The notes beneath the pieces were generated by a model, which was given only the letters and a program-made list of their open reading frames with translations, ran no database searches and was not told the origin of the DNA. Positions 1 to 11,539 of a stretch of 64,000 nucleotides of DNA are shown in pieces. The position numbers and the translations under genes were made by a program. The first letter of the stretch is position 1, and each line of letters begins with the position of its first letter. The DNA is taken from positions 57,288,001-57,352,000 of the forward strand of contig OZ286474.1 of the NCBI GenBank assembly GCA_965644265.1. Direction: 5' to 3'. Origin of the DNA: Glycera tridactyla (taxonomy: Eukaryota).

Positions 1-134
1 AGGAGAGAAAGAGAGAAAGAGAGAAAGAGAAAGAAAGGAAGAGAGAAAGACAGAGAGAGAAAGATAGGTAGATAGATAGATAGAGGGAGAGAAAGAGAGA
101 GGTGGATAGATAGAGAGAGAAAGAGATAGAGAGA

Positions 135-213
<79 letters not shown>

Positions 214-552
214 TATCCGACATCANNNNNNNNNNNNNNNNNNNNNNNNNNNNNNNNNNNNNNNNNNNNNNNNNNNNNNNNNNNNNNNNNNNNNNNNNNN
301 NNNNNNNNNNNNNNNNNNNNNNNNNNNNNNNNNNNNNNNNNNNNNNNNNNNNNNNNNNNNNNNNNNNNNNNNNNNNNNNNNNNNNNNNNNNNNNNNNNNN
401 NNNNNNNNNNNNNNNNNNNNNNNNNNNNNNNNNNNNNNNNNNNNNNNNNCATGAAATGAAGCGAAGACACAGAGAGAAAGATAGAGAGAGATAGAGAGAA
501 AGATAGAGAGAGATAGAGAGAAAGATAGAGAGAGATAGAGAGAGATAGAGAG
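1..552. repeat. (GA)n/(GATA)n microsatellite interrupted by an assembly gap
   Basis: GA and GATA runs at 1-204 and 471-552, with N-run 226-449 between them. Confidence 0.95.
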
Positions 553-1634: not shown

Positions 1635-1811
1635 CAGTAGAATCTGTCCATGAAGGTCACCTTTGGTCACATCAAAAATTGGCCTTCTAAGATAGGTGAC
1701 CGTCATAGAGGGTTTATTCACTGTTGAAAAGGATATCACGGTCGCAGCTCAGGGTGGCTTCTACATGCAGTTTTTCATATGGAGTTGGTCTCTAGAGCAG
1801 GTTCAACTTTA
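1635..1811. mobile_element. Possible degenerate Tc1/pogo-like MITE remnant
   Basis: CAGTAGAATCTGTC at 1635 pairs imperfectly with GAGCAGGTTCAACTTT at ~1796-1810. There is also an internal inverted pair GGTCACCT (~1655) / AGGTGACC (~1694). Heavily diverged, with no clean TA TSD. Confidence 0.3.
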
Positions 1812-2022
1812 ATATGGAACACATCCATTTGTCAAGCGCAGGGTTCCATCAATGATATGCGGAGATTCCCCGCTCGTCCTATCGGGATCATGGAACATAT
1901 ATCCGCGCTAATGCTGCGGTCAAAGTCTGCAGCTTCCGGGATTGTCTGCTATCGATGAAAAAAGGAAGGTGCACGGAAATAGATATTACTTACACATATT
2001 ATATTCCAGGTAAAATGCTTTT

Positions 2023-2145
2023 TAGTCCGGTGGCTTATGTAGCATATTTGGGTCCCGTGTGCTTGGAATGTTAATTTTATCCAACTTATATGGTTGCATC
2101 AAGCATACTCTGGAGAACATAAAAATGGTTGTTGGAAATTTTTTC
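2023..2145 (+). repeat. Left TIR of the AcademX element
   Basis: 20 bp perfect, then imperfect blocks matching the right end: GTCCCGTGTGCTTGGAATGTTAATTTTATCC and AAAAATGGTTGTTGGAAATTTTT. Confidence 0.88.
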
Positions 2146-2747
2146 AATGAATTTTTCATTGAGAAAAATGATATCAAAGTTGCAGGATTTGGGAAAAAAT
2201 TGTAATGTGTGGTGGGCTCTCCATACTCCCCGAATATGTAAGCGACCACACTAATCGACTTAACAGATGGGCAATCCGACACCCTGGTATGGTGGTTGGG
2301 TGATTAAGGAGGGGGAAATCCCTCTCACCCCCACCCCTCACTCACATTCCCCGACAATATTATCACCTAGAAGAGCATGCAGCCTTGTGTAACACCAGTC
2401 ACAAAATCACACGAGTATTGGACAATTTGAGCTTCAGGATTCACCATTTATCTGGTAAGTTTGATATATTCTTTTCTCAGTATTTTCTCATGCTGATTGT
2501 TTCTTTTGAGTGGAAAAAAATCTCAGTCAATTCATGTATTTTGGCTCTTAGTGTGATTCACCCATTAACAGAAGTCTTCTCTTCATTGATAGACATGAAA
2601 GTGCCTGCAGATATTTTGCCTCTATAGATGTGTTTATACCATTTCCGTCACAGGATAAAGAACAGGGATATACAGAAAATATCAAATGTTGTTTGTTTCA
2701 TCAAATCCATTGAAAGCAGGATGAATGGTGCCTTGCACTGAACATAT

Positions 2748-2876
2748 GCATGCACACATATACACACACACATACATACAAACATATGCATGTATGCACA
2801 CACATGTATGTACACATACACACATGCATGCTCACACTCACACATGTGCACATATACATATGAACACACATACATA
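2748..2876. repeat. Compound (CA)/(TA)/CATG microsatellite inside the AcademX 5' non-coding region
   Basis: Degenerate CACA/CATA/CATG array. Confidence 0.9.
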
Positions 2877-3425
2877 AAAAATGGACTGGTACATGTGGTT
2901 TAATGTAATCAATGAATATTGATAGACAAAATAATCCGGGGCAATTTTAACATATGTGATGCAGAAGTACCCACCTCCCTTGACCTATTTATGGCTTCTG
3001 TAGCCTCGTTCCTCAATATGGCTGACGCCTACTGTGGTCAGGCAGTAATGTAACCAAGTGACGGGCCTTCTCCACCCACGGTGAATGTATATATGGCAAG
3101 CCAGATTCCCGNNNNNNNNNNNNNNNNNNNNNNNNNNNNNNNNNNNNNNNNNNNNNNNNNNNNNNNNNNNNNNNNNNNNNNNNNNNNNNNNNNNNNNNNN
3201 NNNNNNNNNNNNNNNNNNNNNNNNNNNNNNNNNNNNNNNNNNNNNNNNNNNNNNNNNNNNNNNNNNNNNNNNNNNNNNNNNNNNNNNNNNNNNNNNNNNN
3301 NNNNNNNNNNNNNNNNNNNNNNNNGACTAAATTATTTGTGGAACTGTTTCAGGGGTTTTGGCTGTAGTCAAGTCGTCCGGATGTGGTGAAGAGAGTCTTT
3401 CCATCCATCTTGAAACAGCGAAGCG

Positions 3426-6400
3426 ATGGATGAAGAGGATCACCCGCCAACCAAGATCCGCAAAGAAACTGACTTCAGCCTCTGCGTCATATGTCAGCTA
3501 CCAGGAAACTTGATCAACACCCCTGCAGAAAAATCTTACCAGACCCTTCTCACATATGTTAGAGGACGTGCTGAATATGGGGAAGGAAGTTATCCCAGTA
3601 TTTCTGCAAGGCTGCAGCAGGAAACTGCAGACTCTCTCATAGTGAAAAAGGCGACTTGGCATCGAACATGCTACTCTGACACTTGCCACAAGAAGCATTT
3701 TGATGCAGCTAAAAAATGTTTTGAAAAAGCACTGCATGCTGGAACAAGTGCTCTGAATCAAAAAGTGGGACGCCCATCTCTTGCATCAGAATGTAGTGAT
3801 GGTGCTGCAAGTGATTCAGCAATTCCTTTCACGCGTTCTTCTTCTAGCCGATTCAATTCCAGCCTGTGTTTTTTCTGCCAGACTACCAGTAGCAGTAAAT
3901 TGCATGAAGTCTCATCTTTCAATGCAGGGACTAAGCTAAGAAATGCTGTTCAGAACTCGGGTAATGACTATTTGAAGGTACGACTGAATGAGGCATTGAA
4001 TCCCGTTGATGCACGTGCTATCGATGTGAAATATCATTTGAAATGTTGGGTGAAGAATGTTGAAAGAGCAAAACCTTCGGATGAAGTTGTATCAAAGTCT
4101 GATGATGTATTAAATGATGAAAACTATAGATGTGTAGCAAGTGACATTGAGTTTTTCAGCTTTGTGAATGATATGTTAGCTGATGGGTCAGTACTAAGCA
4201 TGGCAGCACTTCAGAATATGTATGAGAAGATACAGTGTTCAAATGGTGTTTCAGATATTGGAATTGATCGACGAGTACTGAAGAATAAACTGGCCAATCA
4301 CAATTCCGACATTGAATTCTCTAAACCAGTGAGAAAAAATGAATCGGAAAGAGTGTTTAAGAAAGCAGTACGTGATAAAGCAATACATAACACTGTTGAG
4401 GCATCACATGATCCTGAGGGAGATATGCTACTAGTGTTCAAATGTGCAAGACTTCTTCGTCAGACAATTTCAACTCATATGAAAAAGGGGTGGGTTTTCG
4501 AAGGAAAACTTAATGATCCACATATTGGGGACCATGTACCACCAGAATTATTCTCATTTCTTCGTTGGTTGATCATAGGACCCTCCTCTAAATTTGGTAC
4601 AGAATTGGATGGCATGACTAATGTCCAGATCACCAATATTGCTGATGTTATTTTACAATCTTTCAAGACAGATAGACAGGTATGTTACCATGAGGGCAAA
4701 GGAGAAGTTCACTTCCGTTCAAAGCATGACTGGCCTCTCCAGTTGGCCATAGCCATTGCAGTTCATCAGTCAACAAGAAGCAAACAACTGATCGATCTTT
4801 TGCATGGATTTGGATTGAGTGTTGATTACAATAGATTGCTTCAGCTAGAAAACCAACTGGCAAATGCGATCACTGCAGAAATTGAAGAGTTGGGTGTGTA
4901 TATTCCACCAGCTCTTGTGAAAGGAAGATTCATCTTTTTTGCCATAGATAACTCTGATTTTTCTGAAGACACGCCAGATGGTAAAGGCACAACCCATGCC
5001 ACGGCTACTGCCATCTTTCAACAGGTATATGAAGGTGAAACTGTGCCAGTTATCAAACCATCACCGAATAGTGGGAAAGAGTTTCTTGACCACTACAAAG
5101 ATAAACAAATTTTGCAGTGTCATGTAAGTTGCAATGCGAAACCAACTTTGCCTGTCTCCACGACATTTGTTCCAGGTGAAGATGAAACACTACTCCAAGA
5201 AACAAAACTTCATGATGTTGCATGGATAATGTCCAAAACTGTTCCTTTAGATGATGATTCTAATGATGGTACTAATGAGAAACCAAACGAAATCCCAACC
5301 TGGTCAGCATACAATTCAGTTTTAACCAAACCAAAACCAATCACTAGTGTCTCAGTTCTTCCACTTGTCGCTGCACCAGCTACTGATTGGGGGACTCTTT
5401 TAACGGTTCTGAAACAGGCTCAACACATCAATGCTGTTGTTGTTGGACCAGAAAGAAAAACTGTCATCACTCTCGATCTTCAGCTATATGAGAAAGCCAA
5501 ATGCTTAGAGATGACAAGAGAAGACTGTGCTGGAAAATGGGTTCTTCGTCTTGGTGAACTTCACACTTTGATGGCAGCTTTACGAACTGTTGGTTCAGCC
5601 ATTGAAGGCAGTGGGATTGATGATGCTTGGGTAGAGTCTAATATCTATGGACCTACAACTGGAAGACAGATCCTTGAATGCAAGCATATGAAACGTTCCC
5701 TGAATGCTCATGTGATTACACTGCTTGCTTTGTATTCTCTCTATCAAGATGCATTTTTTAAGGATAGGCCTGAATTGAAACAAGTATGTGAGCCAGCCCT
5801 TCAAGCAATTAGAGACCTGTGGAAAGGCAAAGATATGGTGAGTGAATCCCATCTACATGTGACAAGTACCCTCAAAGACAAGGTTCTCCCTCAACTGCAA
5901 GACTTTAATGAGAAAAACCGCCAGAAACCCATGTTCACTGTTTTCTATGAGTATATGGATATGGTTTTACTGATCTTGGCTTTTGTTCGAGCAACTCGTG
6001 ATGGTGATTGGGATTTGCACTTGGCTTCTACTGAAGGGCTAGCCAAATACTTCTTTGCACATGACAAATTGAAATATGCACGGATGGTGCCACTCTATGT
6101 CTCAGATATGCACTCACTCAAGAATACAAATCCAGAAATCTGGGCTGAGTTTCAGGCTGGAAACTTTGTTGTGAACAAAAACAAAGTTCCATTCTGTGCA
6201 ATAGGACCAGATCATGGCATTGAACATGAGAATCGATGGATGAAAGTTGCGGGTGGCTTAGTGGGCATAACACTGAATGAGAGTGCCTCTACCAGGTTAT
6301 TTCTTATCACACCTGAGCTTGCCCGTCTTGCTGAAGAGAGCAGGTCACTTGCTGGGATTAATAATTCCATTCAGGCACAACACCATGAATTGTCATCAAC

Positions 6401-6683
6401 ATTCACTGCGAGACAGCATGATCAAGTTGATAAATTGAGATCAGTTTTCCTCCAGTACAACAATCCTTTCATGTATGAGGGAGATGAGCTGCTGAGTTTA
6501 CTCAGTTCAGCTGTCATGCCACCACGAGTTGTTTCTGATCTTTGCAATCAGAAAAGCATTGGCACCAATCTCTATATGCAGTTTGTGTCCGAGAGGGTGA
6601 TCTCCAATTCTGTCAATTTCTGGGCTCCAATGAGAAAGGCAAATCTGAATGTTTGGAAAAGTGCCTCCAAGTACGGACAATGA
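3426..6683 (+). CDS. Academ transposase (5' part of a frameshift-split ORF), 1085 aa
   Basis: Uninterrupted 1085-codon ORF. Two N-terminal CxxC...HxxC motifs (CVICQ...WHRTC; CFFCQ...YHLKC). Academ-type core motifs FAIDNSDFSEDTPDGKGTTH, TVITLDLQLYEKA, LRLGELHTLM, RATRDGDWDLHL and DHGIEHENRWMKVAGGLVGIT. Lies between Academ-type TIRs. Confidence 0.85.
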   Translation: MDEEDHPPTKIRKETDFSLCVICQLPGNLINTPAEKSYQTLLTYVRGRAEYGEGSYPSISARLQQETADSLIVKKATWHRTCYSDTCHKKHFDAAKKCFEKALHAGTSALNQKVGRPSLASECSDGAASDSAIPFTRSSSSRFNSSLCFFCQTTSSSKLHEVSSFNAGTKLRNAVQNSGNDYLKVRLNEALNPVDARAIDVKYHLKCWVKNVERAKPSDEVVSKSDDVLNDENYRCVASDIEFFSFVNDMLADGSVLSMAALQNMYEKIQCSNGVSDIGIDRRVLKNKLANHNSDIEFSKPVRKNESERVFKKAVRDKAIHNTVEASHDPEGDMLLVFKCARLLRQTISTHMKKGWVFEGKLNDPHIGDHVPPELFSFLRWLIIGPSSKFGTELDGMTNVQITNIADVILQSFKTDRQVCYHEGKGEVHFRSKHDWPLQLAIAIAVHQSTRSKQLIDLLHGFGLSVDYNRLLQLENQLANAITAEIEELGVYIPPALVKGRFIFFAIDNSDFSEDTPDGKGTTHATATAIFQQVYEGETVPVIKPSPNSGKEFLDHYKDKQILQCHVSCNAKPTLPVSTTFVPGEDETLLQETKLHDVAWIMSKTVPLDDDSNDGTNEKPNEIPTWSAYNSVLTKPKPITSVSVLPLVAAPATDWGTLLTVLKQAQHINAVVVGPERKTVITLDLQLYEKAKCLEMTREDCAGKWVLRLGELHTLMAALRTVGSAIEGSGIDDAWVESNIYGPTTGRQILECKHMKRSLNAHVITLLALYSLYQDAFFKDRPELKQVCEPALQAIRDLWKGKDMVSESHLHVTSTLKDKVLPQLQDFNEKNRQKPMFTVFYEYMDMVLLILAFVRATRDGDWDLHLASTEGLAKYFFAHDKLKYARMVPLYVSDMHSLKNTNPEIWAEFQAGNFVVNKNKVPFCAIGPDHGIEHENRWMKVAGGLVGITLNESASTRLFLITPELARLAEESRSLAGINNSIQAQHHELSSTFTARQHDQVDKLRSVFLQYNNPFMYEGDELLSLLSSAVMPPRVVSDLCNQKSIGTNLYMQFVSERVISNSVNFWAPMRKANLNVWKSASKYGQ

Positions 6684-8227
6684 ACCAGACATCACAATTG
6701 AAAGAAGAACGTGCTCTGTTTGCTCGATGCCTGATTGTCGCAAGATCACGACCAGAAATTGATGTAAAGTCTGCACTTGGGGTTCATGAATTTTCTAAAT
6801 ATCCCCGAGCTTTGTTCTCATCAACTGGAGAAGTTCTTCCCTGCTTGGACGAGAGCAAATTGATGGTGGCATTGGAAAACCTTCCAAGTGAAGGCAACAT
6901 GACATCAACTGAGCCTATTGAAATTGGAAATAAAGCTACAATCATAATTGATGCCATGGGTGTTGTCCAAGGAATGGGAAAACCTTCATGGGTGAGAACA
7001 TGCAAAGATATTGCTGATCATTTCTGTAGTATTATTGAACACAGGTCAATGCCATATAGTGAGGTTCACTTGATTTTCGATCGTTATGATATCCCAATGT
7101 CACTGAAGAATGTCACCAAAACACACCAACGAAGTAAAGGGGCAGGTATCATTTATGACATCTCTGACAACACCTTAATCACCAGTGTATCATTGAAACG
7201 TTTGCTCTCAGAAACATTGACAAAGGACTACCTTACTGCATATCTGGCTGAAAAAGTCCTTGCAAAATTTCATGAGTCAAATAAAAGCTTTGTTGTCGCA
7301 TACAGAGATATGGCTATCTCTAATCGAATAGATGTTCAACATCTGAGAAGCACGCATGAGGAGGCTGACACCAAAATACTTCTTCATGCAGTTGATGCAG
7401 TGAAGCGTGGGACAACAGATCTGGACATTCAGTCATCAGATACTGATGTTTTAGTCCTTACCCTTCATCGGTTCTCTGAACTATGCACAAACACACGGTT
7501 TTTAACTGGTGCAGGTTCAGGTAAGCGTGCTATCATGTTAGCACCAATCCATGAAGCTCTAGGTGAGACTAAATGTCAGGCACTCCTGGGGTTCCATGCA
7601 ATGTCAGGATGTGATTTGACTGGGAGATTTGCTGGCAGGAGTAAGCTAGCCTGGTTCAAGGGATTTCTGAAAGCAGACAAGGCTATGCTCAATGCTTTAA
7701 CTGATTTAGCAGATGTCAGTTCACCATTGCTCTCAATTTCTGAGGCATTAGAACAATTTGTGTGTCAGGTGTACCAACCAGGGACTGCTTTTCACAGCAC
7801 ATCTGAACTCAGGTGGCACTTCTTCAGCAAGAAACAAGCTGAAGGTGAAAAACTTCCCCCAACAAAAGGAGCTCTGTTTCAGCACTTTCTTAGAGCAAAG
7901 TACCAGGCAGTAGTTTGGAATTCCGATACTGTGGCAACGCCAGAATCACCTGACCCTCAGGAGTATGGCTGGAGCATGAATTCTGGTTCATTTAGTCCCA
8001 TTCCCAGTCTTGTTCCTCCAGCCCCTCTAGCAATTACTGAGCTCATCAAGTGCAGCTGCAGTAAGACACAATGTTCTTCACGATGCTCCTGCAAAAAGCA
8101 TGGGCTGCTCTGCACAGACATGTGTCAGTGTGGTGCTGATGACGGCCTTTGTCAGAATATCATCGAGTTCAATCTACCACAGTTGTTTGATGAAATGACT
8201 GGAGATGATGATGAGCTTGTTGAATAG
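6542..8227 (+). CDS. XPG/FEN1-like (PIN-fold) nuclease plus C-terminal CXC-like Cys cluster; 3' part of the Academ ORF (the homologous part probably begins at ~6671)
   Basis: Acidic motifs IIIDAMG, HLIFDRYD, HEEADTKILLHA, SSDTDVLVL and an H2TH/H3TH-like SGCDLTGRFAGRSK. C-terminal CSCSKTQCSSRCSCKKHGLLCTDMCQCGADDGLC. Frame is -1 relative to the upstream ORF. Confidence 0.85.
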   Translation: MQSEKHWHQSLYAVCVREGDLQFCQFLGSNEKGKSECLEKCLQVRTMNQTSQLKEERALFARCLIVARSRPEIDVKSALGVHEFSKYPRALFSSTGEVLPCLDESKLMVALENLPSEGNMTSTEPIEIGNKATIIIDAMGVVQGMGKPSWVRTCKDIADHFCSIIEHRSMPYSEVHLIFDRYDIPMSLKNVTKTHQRSKGAGIIYDISDNTLITSVSLKRLLSETLTKDYLTAYLAEKVLAKFHESNKSFVVAYRDMAISNRIDVQHLRSTHEEADTKILLHAVDAVKRGTTDLDIQSSDTDVLVLTLHRFSELCTNTRFLTGAGSGKRAIMLAPIHEALGETKCQALLGFHAMSGCDLTGRFAGRSKLAWFKGFLKADKAMLNALTDLADVSSPLLSISEALEQFVCQVYQPGTAFHSTSELRWHFFSKKQAEGEKLPPTKGALFQHFLRAKYQAVVWNSDTVATPESPDPQEYGWSMNSGSFSPIPSLVPPAPLAITELIKCSCSKTQCSSRCSCKKHGLLCTDMCQCGADDGLCQNIIEFNLPQLFDEMTGDDDELVE

Positions 8228-9067
8228 GCATGTTGATGTATGACAATTCACGAGCATTACACTTAATCACTGAGGATAATGATAAGATGACAGGTTAAAG
8301 TATCATAATTGATCAGCATCACAATCAATCGTCGCCATGAATCAAGTTATGAAATATTGTAGCACTTTACAGATATATCACTTACTTCACTTGTGATAGA
8401 ATATTGACTCGAAAAAAAGATCAGAATATTTGGTAGGTTATGCTGTTGAACCTTTGTTAGCAAAGTTCACCATAAGCAATGATTTCACTGGAAATGAACT
8501 ATGAAGGATCTCTGAATATATCTGCTTAGAAAGACCAATGTTCATGCCAAAAGGTGGTTTTTGTTGACATGTTTGACTATACAGTAATAGAATATGATGA
8601 TGAAGACAACACATCTGAAATCCTTTTACCAGAAGTTATTTTCACTTTAGTAGATGTTATTCAGAGAGTCATGGTGTGTTGATATTGCATGCATACAGAC
8701 GTGTGTGTGACACCAGCCATGCATTCATCCGTACCAAATCATTTTTTGCATATTTTCCATTTCAAAATAGGACTAGTTCAAAAAGGTGCTGATTATTCAA
8801 TATTTCCAGCTGTGCTCTGTGACTTGCTGAGGCAAATTTCAGTTATTGAAATGGAGCTAGGATAATTCATGATATGATGCATTTCATTTGTCTATTTTTT
8901 TCATGATTATTTGTATAATAACTGTATGATATTGTTTTCTACTGATTCTGTAAACTGTAAATACCCTTTTTCAATATTAAACTATGTTCATTTGTATAAG
9001 AGCATGTTTTTATTTAAATTCAAAATAAAATTTCATGGAGATTTGCCCTATTTTTGTTGGTTCCTCC

Positions 9068-9110
9068 GGACCTGACCTGGCGTGACCTTTGACCTTTGAC
9101 CTTTGACCCT
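9068..9110 (+). repeat. Subterminal TGACCTT heptamer array
   Basis: TGACCTT x3 plus TGACCCT at 9083-9110, preceded by GGACCT and TGACCT, directly inside the right TIR. Confidence 0.85.
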
Positions 9111-9121
9111 TAGGCCCAAAA

Positions 9122-9233
9122 GAAAAATTTCCAACAATCATTTTTGAAAAGCCTGGACCTCATAGATCATTGCTGGGTATGTGGGATAAAATTAACATTC
9201 CATGCACACGGGACTACATAAGCCACCGGACTA
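9122..9233 (-). repeat. Right TIR of the AcademX element
   Basis: Reverse complement of 2023-2145, with a perfect terminal 20 bp. Confidence 0.88.
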
Positions 9234-11539
9234 TTTCGATGATGATGAGTGATTTTACATATCAGGATTCTTATAAATGGCTCTCGCAGTACGCATAGAA
9301 AACCAGAAAAAAGGTCAATGGCGCAAATAAGACATCTAGACAAATGCATTCTTGTGAAAGTCTCATAAGTTAGAATCAGTAGTAAATGGACCTGCCTTGA
9401 TATACTCATCTCTTTCGACGTCCTGTTATTATTCGGGTGGTCATGGTTTTTATTGAACACTTTTTTCGGATGTCTTGAAAAGAAATTGGCGTGTCTGAAG
9501 AATAGACATCATCAGGCATTCCGGCTCAGTTGGAAAAGTCCGAATATCTCTTTCAGCTTTTGAAGTTGTGTTACCATTCGTCTGTCTGGCTGTCTGTCGG
9601 TGAGTGTGGCTTTCAATTTGCCTCAATTGTCTTTTCTCTGTCTCTTCCCTCGTTTCCTCTACGCTCTCTTCTCCTCGCCGTCTCTTGGTCCGTTGATGAA
9701 AAAGCTAACACCCAAACATGTCTTGTGGAGAAACACAAGACGAAATGTTTTTCAATCTTCGCGAGTTACCTCCATCGTGCCAAAAGTTGAGCCATACGGC
9801 CATTTTTAGGGACGTTTCCCTATTTTACGACACTGAACCTATAATGTCACGAATTTCTCCATTTCTGACTGTCTACAAGGTGCTATTTTAGAATATATTC
9901 GTGAAACTACGAGCCATACATATTAGTTCACATGACCCAACAACATGCTCCAAGCCACACAGCCTCGATCACATTCGGCTGCATCGTTTCAGACATATGA
10001 AATAAATAAATGTGGTCATCTATATCGAACATAATGTGTGTTGACTTCGTACTATCACTTATCTACATGTTACGCAACCAGCACAGAGAATGTATGTACA
10101 ATGTAATGTTATGAATGAAATGTCATACAATTTGATCAGAGATAGAGTTCCACGAGCGTCTGATCATGTATGATTTGCATGACTCGAATTGTCGAAGATA
10201 TGGTATTGTTATCTACTGATGTTGTCCCCACACATGTTCATGTTCACTGTGTAAGGCAGTCGCCAAACAAAACTGACCTGTTGGATGGTATGTGAACCAA
10301 TCACATGCTCACAGGGTAAACACTGTGATTGACAGTCTGTGAATTCCTTAACATTTCACTTTCGTTGAAGACCCCGAACAATGAGTCTTGAATGATCCTA
10401 CCCATGCCCATCGCACAACCAACCAACCATCAACCTGCACGTATTATGCTAGATGCGGCACATTATCTGATCTACTTAAACTAGATTGGTCATTGATTGA
10501 TTATGCCACATGGAAGTGTGTGGTCATGCGGAAATACTCATGGAATTCTGCTAAAACACTGCATAGTTTCCCATATTCCAGCTGAACGTTGAGTTCACAC
10601 CTGCCATGTTCCCATGATTCCATCGCCCAACATATCCCCCTACCTTCCGATAGAATTCCCCAATCCCAACTATGACCTAATATACCATTGTTTTTCAGAG
10701 CGCTTCATATTTGTAGTATTGTTGGTGACAAGAGCGCTCCCAAATCTGGTAAGTGAGTGGCTCTATGCAGATGATTGAGCACCTGGCTGCTTTACCAGCT
10801 TAGTGAGCGGATGTCATGGAAAGGATTGGGCATCGATCGATAGCTTGCACAACTAATCTGGTTATGGCTTGGATCCAAAGCCTCCTCCGACATTGAAGGT
10901 CTATTCGCAAGTATGGAATGGCGCACGTTCGGCATCATGCCAAATTTCTGTGACATATCCCATAGCATTCTTTGTGATATGTAGGGCTGGTGATAGGCCG
11001 GAACAACGTTAAGAATCATCTCCAAATACTCATCATGCTTGCATCGATTAGATGATATTCGAAACCCATGCCCTTTAGAACTATCATCGGCAGTACTTTT
11101 GAATGACCAACGTGAACGTTGGCATCATGTCAATTTTGAATGAAATGAAAGTAGCATGTCCATATGTCATCATCGCTGATGTATATCATAAAATCGCGAA
11201 AAAATGATACGATCCTTCATCAGAAATTGTCAAGGGAGGCGGGAAGTTGCAGTATGTGAGTGGTCGTATTTGTGGAGGGATATAGGAGAACGAAAAAAAA
11301 AGATTCATGCCATTTCCTTTTTGTTAAACATAAGTCAAAATCCGTCCAATCAGACTTGTTTCAGTTAAAAGTGCAGAATATCAAAATGGACCAGTTCATG
11401 GCGTCAACGTCCGTCAACAATGGTCACGTTCACTGTCTGGTTAGGAAAGACATTAGGAATCTGATCATGTGCAAAGCATACACAGGTTGACAGCGTGCAT
11501 GTCATCTATGACATGGTGGAGTCTGGTAGCCTGGAGTCA

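What the first reader, a model, noticed from the sequence alone, without database searches (positions are those of the whole stretch)
2023..9233. Near-intact AcademX transposon with a catalytically complete XPG/FEN1-like nuclease
Seen: both ends, a TTT TSD and 4.8 kb of coding sequence with one lesion, which suggests a very young copy. Known: AcademX elements fuse a DDE-type transposase to an XPG-like nuclease, and I know of no demonstrated role for that nuclease. Seen: acidic residues at the FEN1-equivalent metal sites (IDAM, FDRYD, HEEAD, SDTD, GCD), a basic arch-like segment (SLKNVTKTHQRSK) and the H2TH/H3TH motif are all retained. Inference: the nuclease may trim flaps or overhangs during excision or gap repair. 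Repairing one base gives a directly testable protein.
Basis: partly seen in the sequence, partly recalled or inferred. Interest (0 to 1): 0.7.

Follow-up and report, generated by a model that had tools for sequence, protein, structure and literature searches.

The report
Broken copy of young AcademX transposon
This is one slightly damaged copy of a very recently spread jumping gene of a known but never experimentally studied kind (AcademX). Its single giant protein joins a cut-and-paste transposase to a flap-endonuclease-like second nuclease, and ten sister copies in the same genome still carry the whole gene unbroken.

Summary
The element is real and lies exactly at 2023-9233, with 20-bp perfect terminal inverted repeats and a TTT target-site duplication.

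- **Family:** The genome holds 12 other full-length copies at about 99.9% identity. Eleven have both flanks readable, and each of those carries its own 3-bp duplication.
- **Lesion:** The window copy is broken by a private 10-bp deletion after 6669, not by one base. It also has six private missense changes.
- **Intact copies:** Ten of the 12 other full-length copies keep one uninterrupted ORF of 1,602-1,603 aa, so no repair is needed to obtain the protein.
- **Protein:** Its parts are two CCHC zinc modules, a DDE RNase H-like transposase, a FEN/EXO1/XPG-fold 5' nuclease, and a CXC-like Cys cluster.
- **Nuclease fold:** The model has pLDDT 87. Its 17 best PDB matches are all 5'-nuclease superfamily members (Z 10-14), and the next match scores Z 6.4.
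- **Nuclease residues:** Seven acidic residues and a Lys are invariant across 35 homologues. Pfam XPG models do not detect the domain.
- **Selection:** Against a divergent sister family, the nuclease (omega about 0.12) is as constrained as the transposase (about 0.11).
- **N run:** 3112-3324 lies upstream of the conserved ATG, and its length fits the other copies.
- **Classification:** It matches published AcademX traits (3-4-bp duplications, a nuclease), but no Repbase or Dfam profile could be run.

The nuclease's role, 5'-strand cutting or trimming, remains inference. The scan had already noted a decayed AcademX on another piece of this genome. Verdict: a new member of a known kind, and a good specimen.

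The parts
2020..2022 (.). left target-site duplication TTT
   Evidence: the 11 other full-length copies with both flanks readable, and one internally deleted copy, each have their own matching 3-bp duplication
2023..2143 (+). 5' terminal inverted repeat: perfect 20 nt at 2023-2042, a 9-nt insert absent from the right end, then imperfect repeats to 2143
3112..3324 (.). run of N (213) in the 5' non-coding part; its letters were not read or looked up
   Evidence: the same interval is 209-219 bp in other copies, and stops lie between it and the ATG
3426..6669 (+). coding sequence, part 1 (residues 1-1081 of the 1,603-aa protein) up to the deletion point
3483..4046 (+). two CCHC zinc-type modules (C20, C23, H79, C82 and C148, C151, H204, C207), the putative DNA-binding region
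   Evidence: (invariant or at least 90% conserved in 28 sequences)
4947..6224 (+). DDE RNase H-like catalytic core with a helical insertion domain: D508 (4947), D684 (5475), E933 (6222); D511 and D929 are also invariant
   Evidence: Pfam DUF6589 scores E 3e-5 here and matches 13 of 32 homologues
6669..6670 (+). site of the private 10-bp deletion (codon 1082), which shifts the frame; the out-of-frame reading stops at 6681-6683
6670..8227 (+). coding sequence, part 2 (residues about 1086-1603 of the intact protein) in the shifted frame, stop at 8225-8227
6848..7972 (+). FEN/EXO1/XPG-fold 5'-nuclease domain (PIN-like core, arch, H3TH). Acidic residues at 6950 (D), 7079 (D), 7358-7361 (EE), 7367 (D), 7439 (D), 7445 (D), 7613 (D); arch S/K at 7100/7106
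8051..8152 (+). CXC-like cysteine cluster (six Cys conserved in at least 90%), followed by an acidic tail
   Evidence: weak matches to Pfam TCR (E 0.021) and LIN54 (E 0.026)
9123..9233 (-). 3' terminal inverted repeat (perfect 20 nt at 9214-9233)
9234..9236 (.). right target-site duplication TTT

Best explanation
Window 2023-9233 is a defective copy of a very young autonomous DNA transposon family of the AcademX type, possibly still active.

Shown here: the family spread by cut-and-paste-type integration that makes 3-bp target duplications. Its intact copies encode one intronless 1,603-aa protein. That protein has two CCHC zinc modules, a DDE RNase H-like transposase with a helical insertion domain, a 5'-nuclease domain of the FEN/EXO1/XPG fold with a full set of metal-binding residues, and a CXC-like Cys cluster. 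The window copy is inactivated by a private 10-bp deletion in the linker between transposase and nuclease.

Inferred mechanism: the zinc modules, and perhaps the CXC cluster, bind the terminal repeats. The DDE site makes the 3'-OH ends and joins them to target strands 3 bp apart. The FEN-like domain is the element's own structure-specific nuclease for the 5' strand. It either cuts the non-transferred strand at the melted transposon end during excision, a division of labour like TnsA/TnsB of Tn7 (my estimate about 0.35). Or it removes 5' flaps at the 3-nt gaps after strand transfer (about 0.3).
For: - Ends and duplication.
- Copies: 12 other full-length copies at about 99.9% identity in unrelated flanks. 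Eleven have both flanks readable, each with its own 3-bp duplication.
- ORFs: 10 of the 12 have an uninterrupted ORF of 1,602-1,603 aa. The deletion is private to the window copy. A public-run contig carries the 10 bases.
- Homologues: 42 homologues at 24-47% identity, most about 1,600 aa and collinear end to end.
- Nuclease model: pLDDT 87, pTM 0.84. Its 17 best PDB matches all belong to the 5'-nuclease superfamily: EXO1 Z 14.0 (rmsd 4.0, 260 aligned), XRN1 13.0, T5 exonuclease 12.3, XPG 12.1, FEN1 12.1, GEN1 11.7. The next, unrelated match scores 6.4. Foldseek gives the same set.
- Nuclease residues: D94, D137, E231, D233, D257, D259, D315, S144 and K146 are invariant; E230, R150 and R153 are at least 90% conserved. 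A profile alignment places FD137 on EXO1 D78 and GxD315 on EXO1 D225.
- Transposase model: pLDDT 88. Best matches are P element transposase Z 9.1, Hermes 8.1, retroviral integrase 8.1 and Tn5 8.0. D508, D684 and E933 are invariant.
- Selection: omega between families is 0.11 for the transposase and 0.125 for the nuclease.
- Literature: AcademX makes 3-4-bp duplications and encodes a nuclease (PMC10045372).
Against: - No Academ reference sequence or profile could be compared, so superfamily membership rests on architecture, duplication length and a sub-threshold Pfam DUF6589 match.
- Pfam XPG_N and XPG_I do not detect the domain even at E 10. A six-frame XPG_I scan of the genome finds only three host loci.
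- The arch Arg conserved in at least 90% of homologues (R153) is Gln in this family, with an Arg one residue later.
- The domain has no free N-terminus, unlike FEN1, EXO1 and XPG, whose first residues sit at the active site.
- Transcription is not shown. The public runs that hold the element are of unknown kind and cover non-coding ends too.
- No biochemical data exist for any Academ nuclease, and nothing here tells excision-stage cutting from post-integration trimming.
- dS between the two families is near saturation, so omega is approximate.
Confidence: 0.85

Rival explanations
1. The nuclease works as an EXO1-like 5'-to-3' resection enzyme on the donor break left by excision. This would bias repair toward homologous recombination from the sister chromatid, so the element is restored at the donor site and gains copies.
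For: EXO1 is the single best structural match (Z 14.0). The only sequence-level PDB matches to a nuclease are to EXO1 (E 0.09). The family shows a burst of near-identical copies.
Against: Z values for EXO1, XRN1, T5 exonuclease, XPG and FEN1 lie within 2 units and cannot separate the sub-families. A burst of copies is expected of any active transposon. No data bear on the substrate.
Confidence: 0.12
2. The domain acts on RNA as an XRN-like 5'-to-3' exoribonuclease, for example to degrade host small-RNA precursors or to process the element's own transcript, rather than on transposition intermediates.
For: Foldseek's lowest E-values are to XRN2/Rat1 (8e-6 to 1e-5). XRN1 gives the longest structural alignments (309-325 residues, Z 12-13).
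Against: The H3TH GxD motif aligns by sequence with EXO1, a DNA enzyme. The domain is permanently fused to a DNA transposase and to a CXC-like module of a DNA-binding type. The sister lineage AcademH carries a helicase in its place, which also points to DNA work.
Confidence: 0.06
3. The FEN-like domain is catalytically dispensable, serving as a structural or DNA-binding module retained for transpososome assembly.
For: The family has Gln at the arch position where at least 90% of homologues have Arg. Pfam XPG models do not recognise the domain.
Against: All seven acidic metal ligands and the arch Lys are invariant in 35 sequences down to 24% identity. The PIN core has omega about 0.10. Such conservation of the metal site is not expected of a purely structural module.
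Confidence: 0.05
4. It is not a mobile element but a multi-copy host gene or a segmental duplication.
For: The ORFs are long and intact.
Against: There are 13 copies on nine different contigs with unrelated flanks, precise shared termini and copy-specific 3-bp duplications. The immediate flanks are single-copy. A non-autonomous family shares the ends.
Confidence: 0.01

Closest known systems
AcademX lineage of the Academ superfamily of eukaryotic DNA transposons (Kapitonov and Jurka 2010, Repbase Reports; Kojima 2020, Mob DNA 11:15; cited in PMC10045372)
   Same: Terminal inverted repeats, 3-bp target duplications (the literature gives 3-4 bp), and one large protein joining a DDE transposase to an XPG-type nuclease. 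Element length is 7.2 kb, in the range of long Academ elements (mean 5.6 kb in bivalves, PMC10294476).
   Different: No tested feature differs. No direct comparison with reference Academ sequences was possible. This family is unusually young, with about 0.08% private divergence per copy and 10 intact ORFs. The nearest protein in the 5.8-billion-sequence collection is 49% identical over its full length and 47% over the nuclease domain.
FEN1/EXO1/XPG/GEN1 structure-specific 5' nucleases (Rad2/XPG family) and their bacterial and phage relatives (T5 exonuclease, T4 RNase H, Pol I 5' nuclease)
   Same: PIN-like core plus H3TH fold (Z 10-14). Seven acidic metal ligands in the same order and similar spacing. 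A Lys/Arg-bearing segment after the second Asp. A GxD motif in the H3TH.
   Different: Sequence identity is 10-15%, below Pfam detection. The domain is embedded at residues about 1145-1520 of a 1,603-aa protein, so it has no free N-terminus. A conserved 60-residue N-terminal extension precedes it. The arch region is about 20 residues longer. A CXC-like Cys cluster follows it.
Tn7 TnsA/TnsB
   Same: As an analogy only: a DDE enzyme for the 3' ends is paired with a second, unrelated nuclease for the 5' strand.
   Different: TnsA has a restriction-enzyme fold and is a separate protein. Here the second nuclease has a FEN fold and is fused. The division of labour is inferred here, not shown.
P element and hAT (Hermes) transposases
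   Same: RNase H-like DDE core interrupted by a large helical insertion domain between the second Asp and the Glu. These are the best structural matches of the core (Z 9.1 and 8.1).
   Different: Z is only moderate and there is no sequence similarity. P makes 8-bp duplications and binds GTP, and hAT makes 8-bp duplications, against 3 bp here. Neither carries a second nuclease.

Membership tests
AcademX (Academ superfamily) | 3-4-bp target-site duplications | tested here: met
   The window copy, 11 other full-length copies and one internally deleted copy each have a matching 3-bp duplication: TTT x2, TAT x5, AAA, ATT, TTA, ATG, TTG. Four non-autonomous relatives have one as well. The criterion comes from PMC10045372.
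AcademX (Academ superfamily) | one protein joining a DDE transposase to an XPG-type nuclease | tested here: met
   A single 1,603-aa ORF in 9 copies and a 1,602-aa ORF in one. Fold matches for both domains. The architecture is collinear in about 30 full-length homologues.
AcademX (Academ superfamily) | significant similarity of the transposase core to reference Academ transposases (Repbase, or the Yuan and Wessler profile) | not testable with these tools
   No Repbase or Dfam here, and Kojima 2020 and Yuan and Wessler 2011 are not held. The only indirect sign is Pfam DUF6589: E 3e-5, below the cut-off here, and matched by 13 of 32 homologues with best E 4e-10.
FEN/XPG 5'-nuclease superfamily | PIN-like core with H3TH fold | tested here: met
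   The top 17 of 48,161 PDB representatives are all family members, Z 10.3-14.0, and the next match scores Z 6.4. Foldseek E values go down to 8e-6.
FEN/XPG 5'-nuclease superfamily | seven conserved acidic metal-binding residues | tested here: met
   D94, D137, E231, D233, D257, D259 and D315 are invariant in 35 sequences and all present in the window copy. Two are placed on EXO1 D78 and D225 by the HMMER alignment. The others are matched by order and spacing only, which is inference.
FEN/XPG 5'-nuclease superfamily | arch Lys and Arg (FEN1 K93/R100, EXO1 K85/R92) | tested here: inconclusive
   K146 is invariant and R153 is at least 90% conserved, 7 residues apart as in FEN1 and EXO1. This family has Q153 followed by R154. 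The arch is modelled at pLDDT 59-74.
FEN/XPG 5'-nuclease superfamily | match to Pfam XPG_N or XPG_I above the curated cut-off | tested here: not met
   No hit even at E 10. The genome-wide XPG_I scan finds three host loci only. Profile against a host XPG exon gives E 0.42. It is therefore a divergent branch of the superfamily, not a member of the Pfam XPG families as defined.
DDE/RNase H-like transposases | RNase H-like fold carrying an invariant D, D, E triad | tested here: met
   D508, D684 and E933 are invariant in 32 sequences. Structural matches are almost all DDE transposases and integrases, led by P element at Z 9.1 with 368 residues aligned. Foldseek is weak (E 0.07, Hermes).
Tesmin/TSO1 CXC domain | match to the CXC profile | tested here: inconclusive
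   Pfam TCR scores E 0.021, 15.6 bits against a cut-off of 23.5. LIN54 scores E 0.026. Six Cys are at least 90% conserved.

The most novel reading that the evidence does not exclude
The family is transposing now. Its FEN-like domain is the dedicated cutter of the non-transferred 5' strand, making AcademX the first eukaryotic cut-and-paste transposon shown to split the two strand cleavages between a DDE site and a second, structure-specific nuclease in one polypeptide. The naturally intact copies would make this directly testable.
Probability: 0.25. Interest if true: 0.7.

Novelty: new member of a known kind. Interest (0 to 1): 0.4.

Why it matters
To my knowledge, no Academ element has been studied at the bench, and the role of its second nuclease is an open question in transposition mechanisms. 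This genome offers what such a study needs:

- a family with ten naturally intact 1,603-aa ORFs
- defined ends
- clear 3-bp duplications
- a matching non-autonomous family
- a high-confidence structural model that names the residues to change

For genome annotation, the result is ordinary: a young AcademX family, with the window copy a dead member of it.

Tried and rejected
- **Pfam on both ORF pieces:** only a sub-threshold DUF6589 match and a weak TCR match, with no XPG family.
- **phmmer of the nuclease piece against PDB:** nothing.
- **hhalign of the nuclease profile against a host XPG_I exon:** not significant.
- **Papers:** Kojima 2020 and Yuan and Wessler 2011 are not held. A search for Academ + Kolobok + XPG gave no paper. 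DUF6589 appears in one unrelated paper.
- **Empty site:** the immediate flanks are single-copy, so no paralogous empty site exists in this assembly.
- **Expression:** the public runs that hold the element are contig sets of unknown kind. They also cover the non-coding ends, so they show presence, not transcription. No splice joints were seen.
- **dN/dS within the family:** rejected as a test, because all differences are post-insertion singletons with a neutral N:S ratio.
- **Intron or programmed frameshift:** I considered that the two-frame layout might reflect one of these. It does not, because the 10-bp gap is private to this copy.
- **Big representative-protein search:** not used, because the family scans and folds had settled the protein.
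- **N run:** its letters were neither read nor inferred; only interval lengths in other copies were compared.
Full report
**Observation**

A perfect 20-nt inverted repeat, TAGTCCGGTGGCTTATGTAG, lies at 2023-2042 and 9214-9233. It is followed inward by two more imperfect inverted repeats. The left arm carries a 9-nt insert that the right arm lacks. The 20-mer occurs nowhere else in the window, with none expected by chance. TTT flanks both ends. Between the ends, two long overlapping frames, 3426-6683 and 6542-8227, together span 4,802 nt.

**The N run (tested first, as asked)**

- The run 3112-3324 lies upstream of the ATG at 3426.
- The reading frame of the ORF has two stops between the run and the ATG.
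- The initiator Met is invariant in 28 homologues. The run is therefore not in the coding sequence.
Using coordinates only, the interval between the homologues of window 3111 and 3325 is 209-219 bp in the 12 other full-length copies, in steps of 2. Here it is 213 N.
- The two sides are therefore continuous parts of one element, and nothing large is missing.

**Copies in the genome**

The assembly is 2.04 Gb in 207 contigs.

- The first 278 bp of the element occur at 100% identity at 14 other places.
- The stretch 3325-9233 occurs full-length at 12 other places at 99-100% identity. There is also one internally deleted copy and one truncated copy.
- Eleven full-length copies and the internally deleted copy have both flanks readable. 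Each sits in unrelated flanks and has its own matching 3-bp duplication: AAA, TAT (five times), TTT, ATT, TTA, ATG, TTG.
- This is direct evidence of transposition with 3-bp staggered target cuts and a preference for A/T-rich targets.
- The window insertion's immediate flanks are single-copy, so no paralogous empty site is available.

**The lesion**

- Aligning the 13 full-length copies shows that the window copy lacks 10 bases after position 6669 that all 12 others have.
- Ten of the 12 have one uninterrupted ORF (1,603 aa in nine, 1,602 aa in one with a 3-bp deletion). The two broken ones have a 1-bp insertion and a 17-bp deletion.
- The two-frame layout is therefore a private frameshift at codon 1082, in the linker between the two enzyme domains. 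It is not an intron or a programmed shift.
- The window copy also has 8 private substitutions. Six are missense: R98C, I403T, G420C, R693C, Q1034R and K1146E. K1146E falls at a Lys kept in at least 90% of homologues.
- Contigs of public runs carry the majority letter at all eight sites and the 10 bases.

**Age**

Every difference among the 13 copies is a singleton. There are about 4-5 substitutions per 5.9 kb copy (about 0.08%). In the coding sequence they split 31 non-synonymous to 11 synonymous, which is the neutral expectation. This is the pattern of a recent burst from one master sequence followed by neutral decay. It also means that dN/dS among these copies cannot test constraint.

**The protein**

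A word search with the nuclease part of an intact copy found 42 proteins at 24-47% identity. Most are about 1,600 aa and align from end to end. None has an informative name; two are from a sea anemone and a butterfly. Three domain alignments were built.

- **N-terminus (A3).** Two CCHC modules, C20/C23/H79/C82 and C148/C151/H204/C207.
- **Core (A2).** Invariant D508, D511, D684, D929 and E933 in motifs DNxDF, TLD and DHxxE. Pfam DUF6589 matches 13 of 32 members.
  - The AlphaFold model has pLDDT 88 and pTM 0.89.
  - Its best PDB matches are P element transposase (Z 9.1, 368 residues aligned), Hermes, retroviral integrase cores, Tn5, ISCth4, and further down RAG1 and Transib.
  - Foldseek alone is weak. 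The Z values are moderate, but the list consists almost wholly of RNase H-fold DDE enzymes.
  - The aligned range spans D508 to E933, with a helical insertion domain between the second Asp and the Glu.
- **Nuclease (A1).** Invariant D94, D137, S144, K146, E231, D233, D257, D259 and D315. E230, R150 and R153 are at least 90% conserved.
  - Add 1085 to these numbers for positions in the full protein.
  - The model has pLDDT 87 and pTM 0.84.
  - Its 17 best matches among 48,161 PDB representatives are all 5'-nuclease superfamily members: EXO1 (Z 14.0), XRN1 (13.0), T5 exonuclease (12.3), XPG (12.1), FEN1 (12.1), GEN1 (11.7), bacterial flap endonucleases and T4 RNase H. The score then drops to 6.4. 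Foldseek agrees.
  - A profile search of PDB sequences gives only weak EXO1 hits (E 0.09). Their alignments place FD137 on EXO1 D78 and GxD315 on EXO1 D225.
  - Pfam XPG_N and XPG_I do not detect the domain. A genome-wide XPG_I scan finds only three host loci.
  - The domain is therefore a divergent branch of the FEN superfamily. 'XPG/FEN1-like' is right at the level of fold and active site but not at the level of Pfam family. The data cannot say which sub-family it is nearest to.
- **C-terminus.** Six conserved Cys give weak matches to the Tesmin/TSO1 CXC domain.

**Differences from canonical FEN enzymes**

- The domain has no free N-terminus.
- A conserved 60-residue extension precedes it.
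- The arch region is about 20 residues longer.
- In this family, the arch position that is Arg in at least 90% of homologues is Gln, with Arg one residue later.

**Constraint**

A divergent, decayed relative in the same genome (L045, 69% amino-acid identity, with an internal partial duplication) allows a comparison between families. By the Nei-Gojobori method, omega is:

| Region | Omega |
|---|---|
| Transposase core | 0.11 |
| Nuclease region | 0.125 |
| PIN core | 0.10 |
| CXC tail | 0.13 |

Here pN is 0.17-0.20 against pS of 0.67-0.72. dS is close to saturation, so the ratios are approximate. Even so, the nuclease is clearly as constrained as the transposase.

**Mechanism**

Shown here:
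- mobility
- 3-bp duplications
- the domain set
- the intact active-site residues
- purifying selection on both enzymes

Inferred:
- The zinc modules bind the terminal repeats.
- The DDE site generates and joins the 3'-OH ends.
- The FEN-like domain handles the 5' strand. It may cut the non-transferred strand at a melted end, as TnsA does for Tn7 (about 0.35).

Rivals, each needing biochemistry to settle:
- EXO1-like resection of the donor break (about 0.12)
- XRN-like action on RNA (about 0.06)
- a non-catalytic role (about 0.05)

The literature notes that the sister lineage AcademH carries a helicase instead and makes 9-10-bp duplications. It suggests that the accessory enzyme is tied to duplication length (PMC10045372).

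**Comparison with what is known**

Terminal repeats, 3-bp duplications and a single transposase-nuclease protein are the published traits of AcademX. From my own recollection, the Kojima 2020 abstract says the same. Academ elements are abundant and long in bivalves (PMC10294476).

I could not run Repbase or Dfam profiles, so formal membership is not tested. No tested feature speaks against it. An earlier follow-up of this scan described a decayed AcademX with a FEN-like nuclease on another piece of the same genome (s1-320757), so the kind had already been seen here. What is new is the state of this family: 13 near-identical full-length copies, ten with intact ORFs.

**Expression**

Four public runs hold the element at 99% identity or more. 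They are contig sets of unknown kind that also cover the non-coding 3' end, and no splice joints were seen. They show presence in other samples, not transcription.

**What I left out**

I built no consensus and no mended version of the broken copy. All protein work used the window's own pieces or unchanged ORFs of other natural copies. I name no copy as the one to use.

**Verdict**

- Observation: confirmed, with the lesion corrected to a 10-bp deletion.
- Interpretation: partly supported.
- Novelty: a new member of a known kind.
- Interest: moderate. It is a good, possibly active specimen for the first bench study of an Academ nuclease.

Noticed in passing
L049-L052 (G000:C51:14967380-14970730, C10:55522510-55525880, C32:63716780-63719980, C26:99123660-99126980): A non-autonomous family of about 3.2 kb whose ends (TAGTAGAGGRGCTTATGTAG...) are 77-85% like those of this element. 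It has the same 9-nt insert in the left arm only. Its 3-bp duplications are GTA, ACA, TCA and CCT. At least 25 copies appear. It is probably mobilised by this transposase or a related one.
   Followed up: partly
L045 (G000:C17:13908800-13917000, minus strand): A divergent autonomous relative (69% amino-acid identity) with a partial internal duplication of the transposase region and broken frames. It was used here for the dN/dS comparison between families.
   Followed up: partly
window 3112-3324: The run of N is 213 long. The same interval in 12 other copies measures 209-219 bp in steps of 2, as a dinucleotide repeat of variable length would give. Only lengths were compared; the letters were not read.
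   Followed up: partly
A 5'-TAGT terminus plus a 3-bp duplication is thus shared with the element studied here, although the 20-mer itself is not (no match within 3 mismatches).
   Followed up: partly
window 9075-9100: Three tandem TGACCTTT units lie just inside the 3' repeat. One genomic copy (L041) and one public-run contig lack 7 bases there.
   Followed up: no
window 2735-2870: A CA/TG-rich, microsatellite-like stretch lies in the 5' non-coding part of the element. It produces a spurious Cys/His-rich minus-strand ORF (2648-2875).
   Followed up: no
window 1-500: Very low G+C (0.23) with extreme GC and AT skews (0.85 and 0.75) marks a purine-rich simple repeat at the window's start.
   Followed up: no
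window 1723-1812: The left flank holds about 90 bp of an unrelated repeat, with at least 40 copies at 77-81% identity.
   Followed up: no
ESM Atlas clusters: Stand-alone eukaryotic proteins of 460-812 aa, mostly from arthropods, have the same nuclease-plus-CXC shape (TM 0.73-0.78). They may be fragments of Academ genes or domesticated copies.
   Followed up: no
public runs X2, X3, X5 (organism B): Runs filed under a second organism label hold parts of the element at 99% identity or more. Whether this is a sister species, a synonym or horizontal spread was not examined.
   Followed up: no
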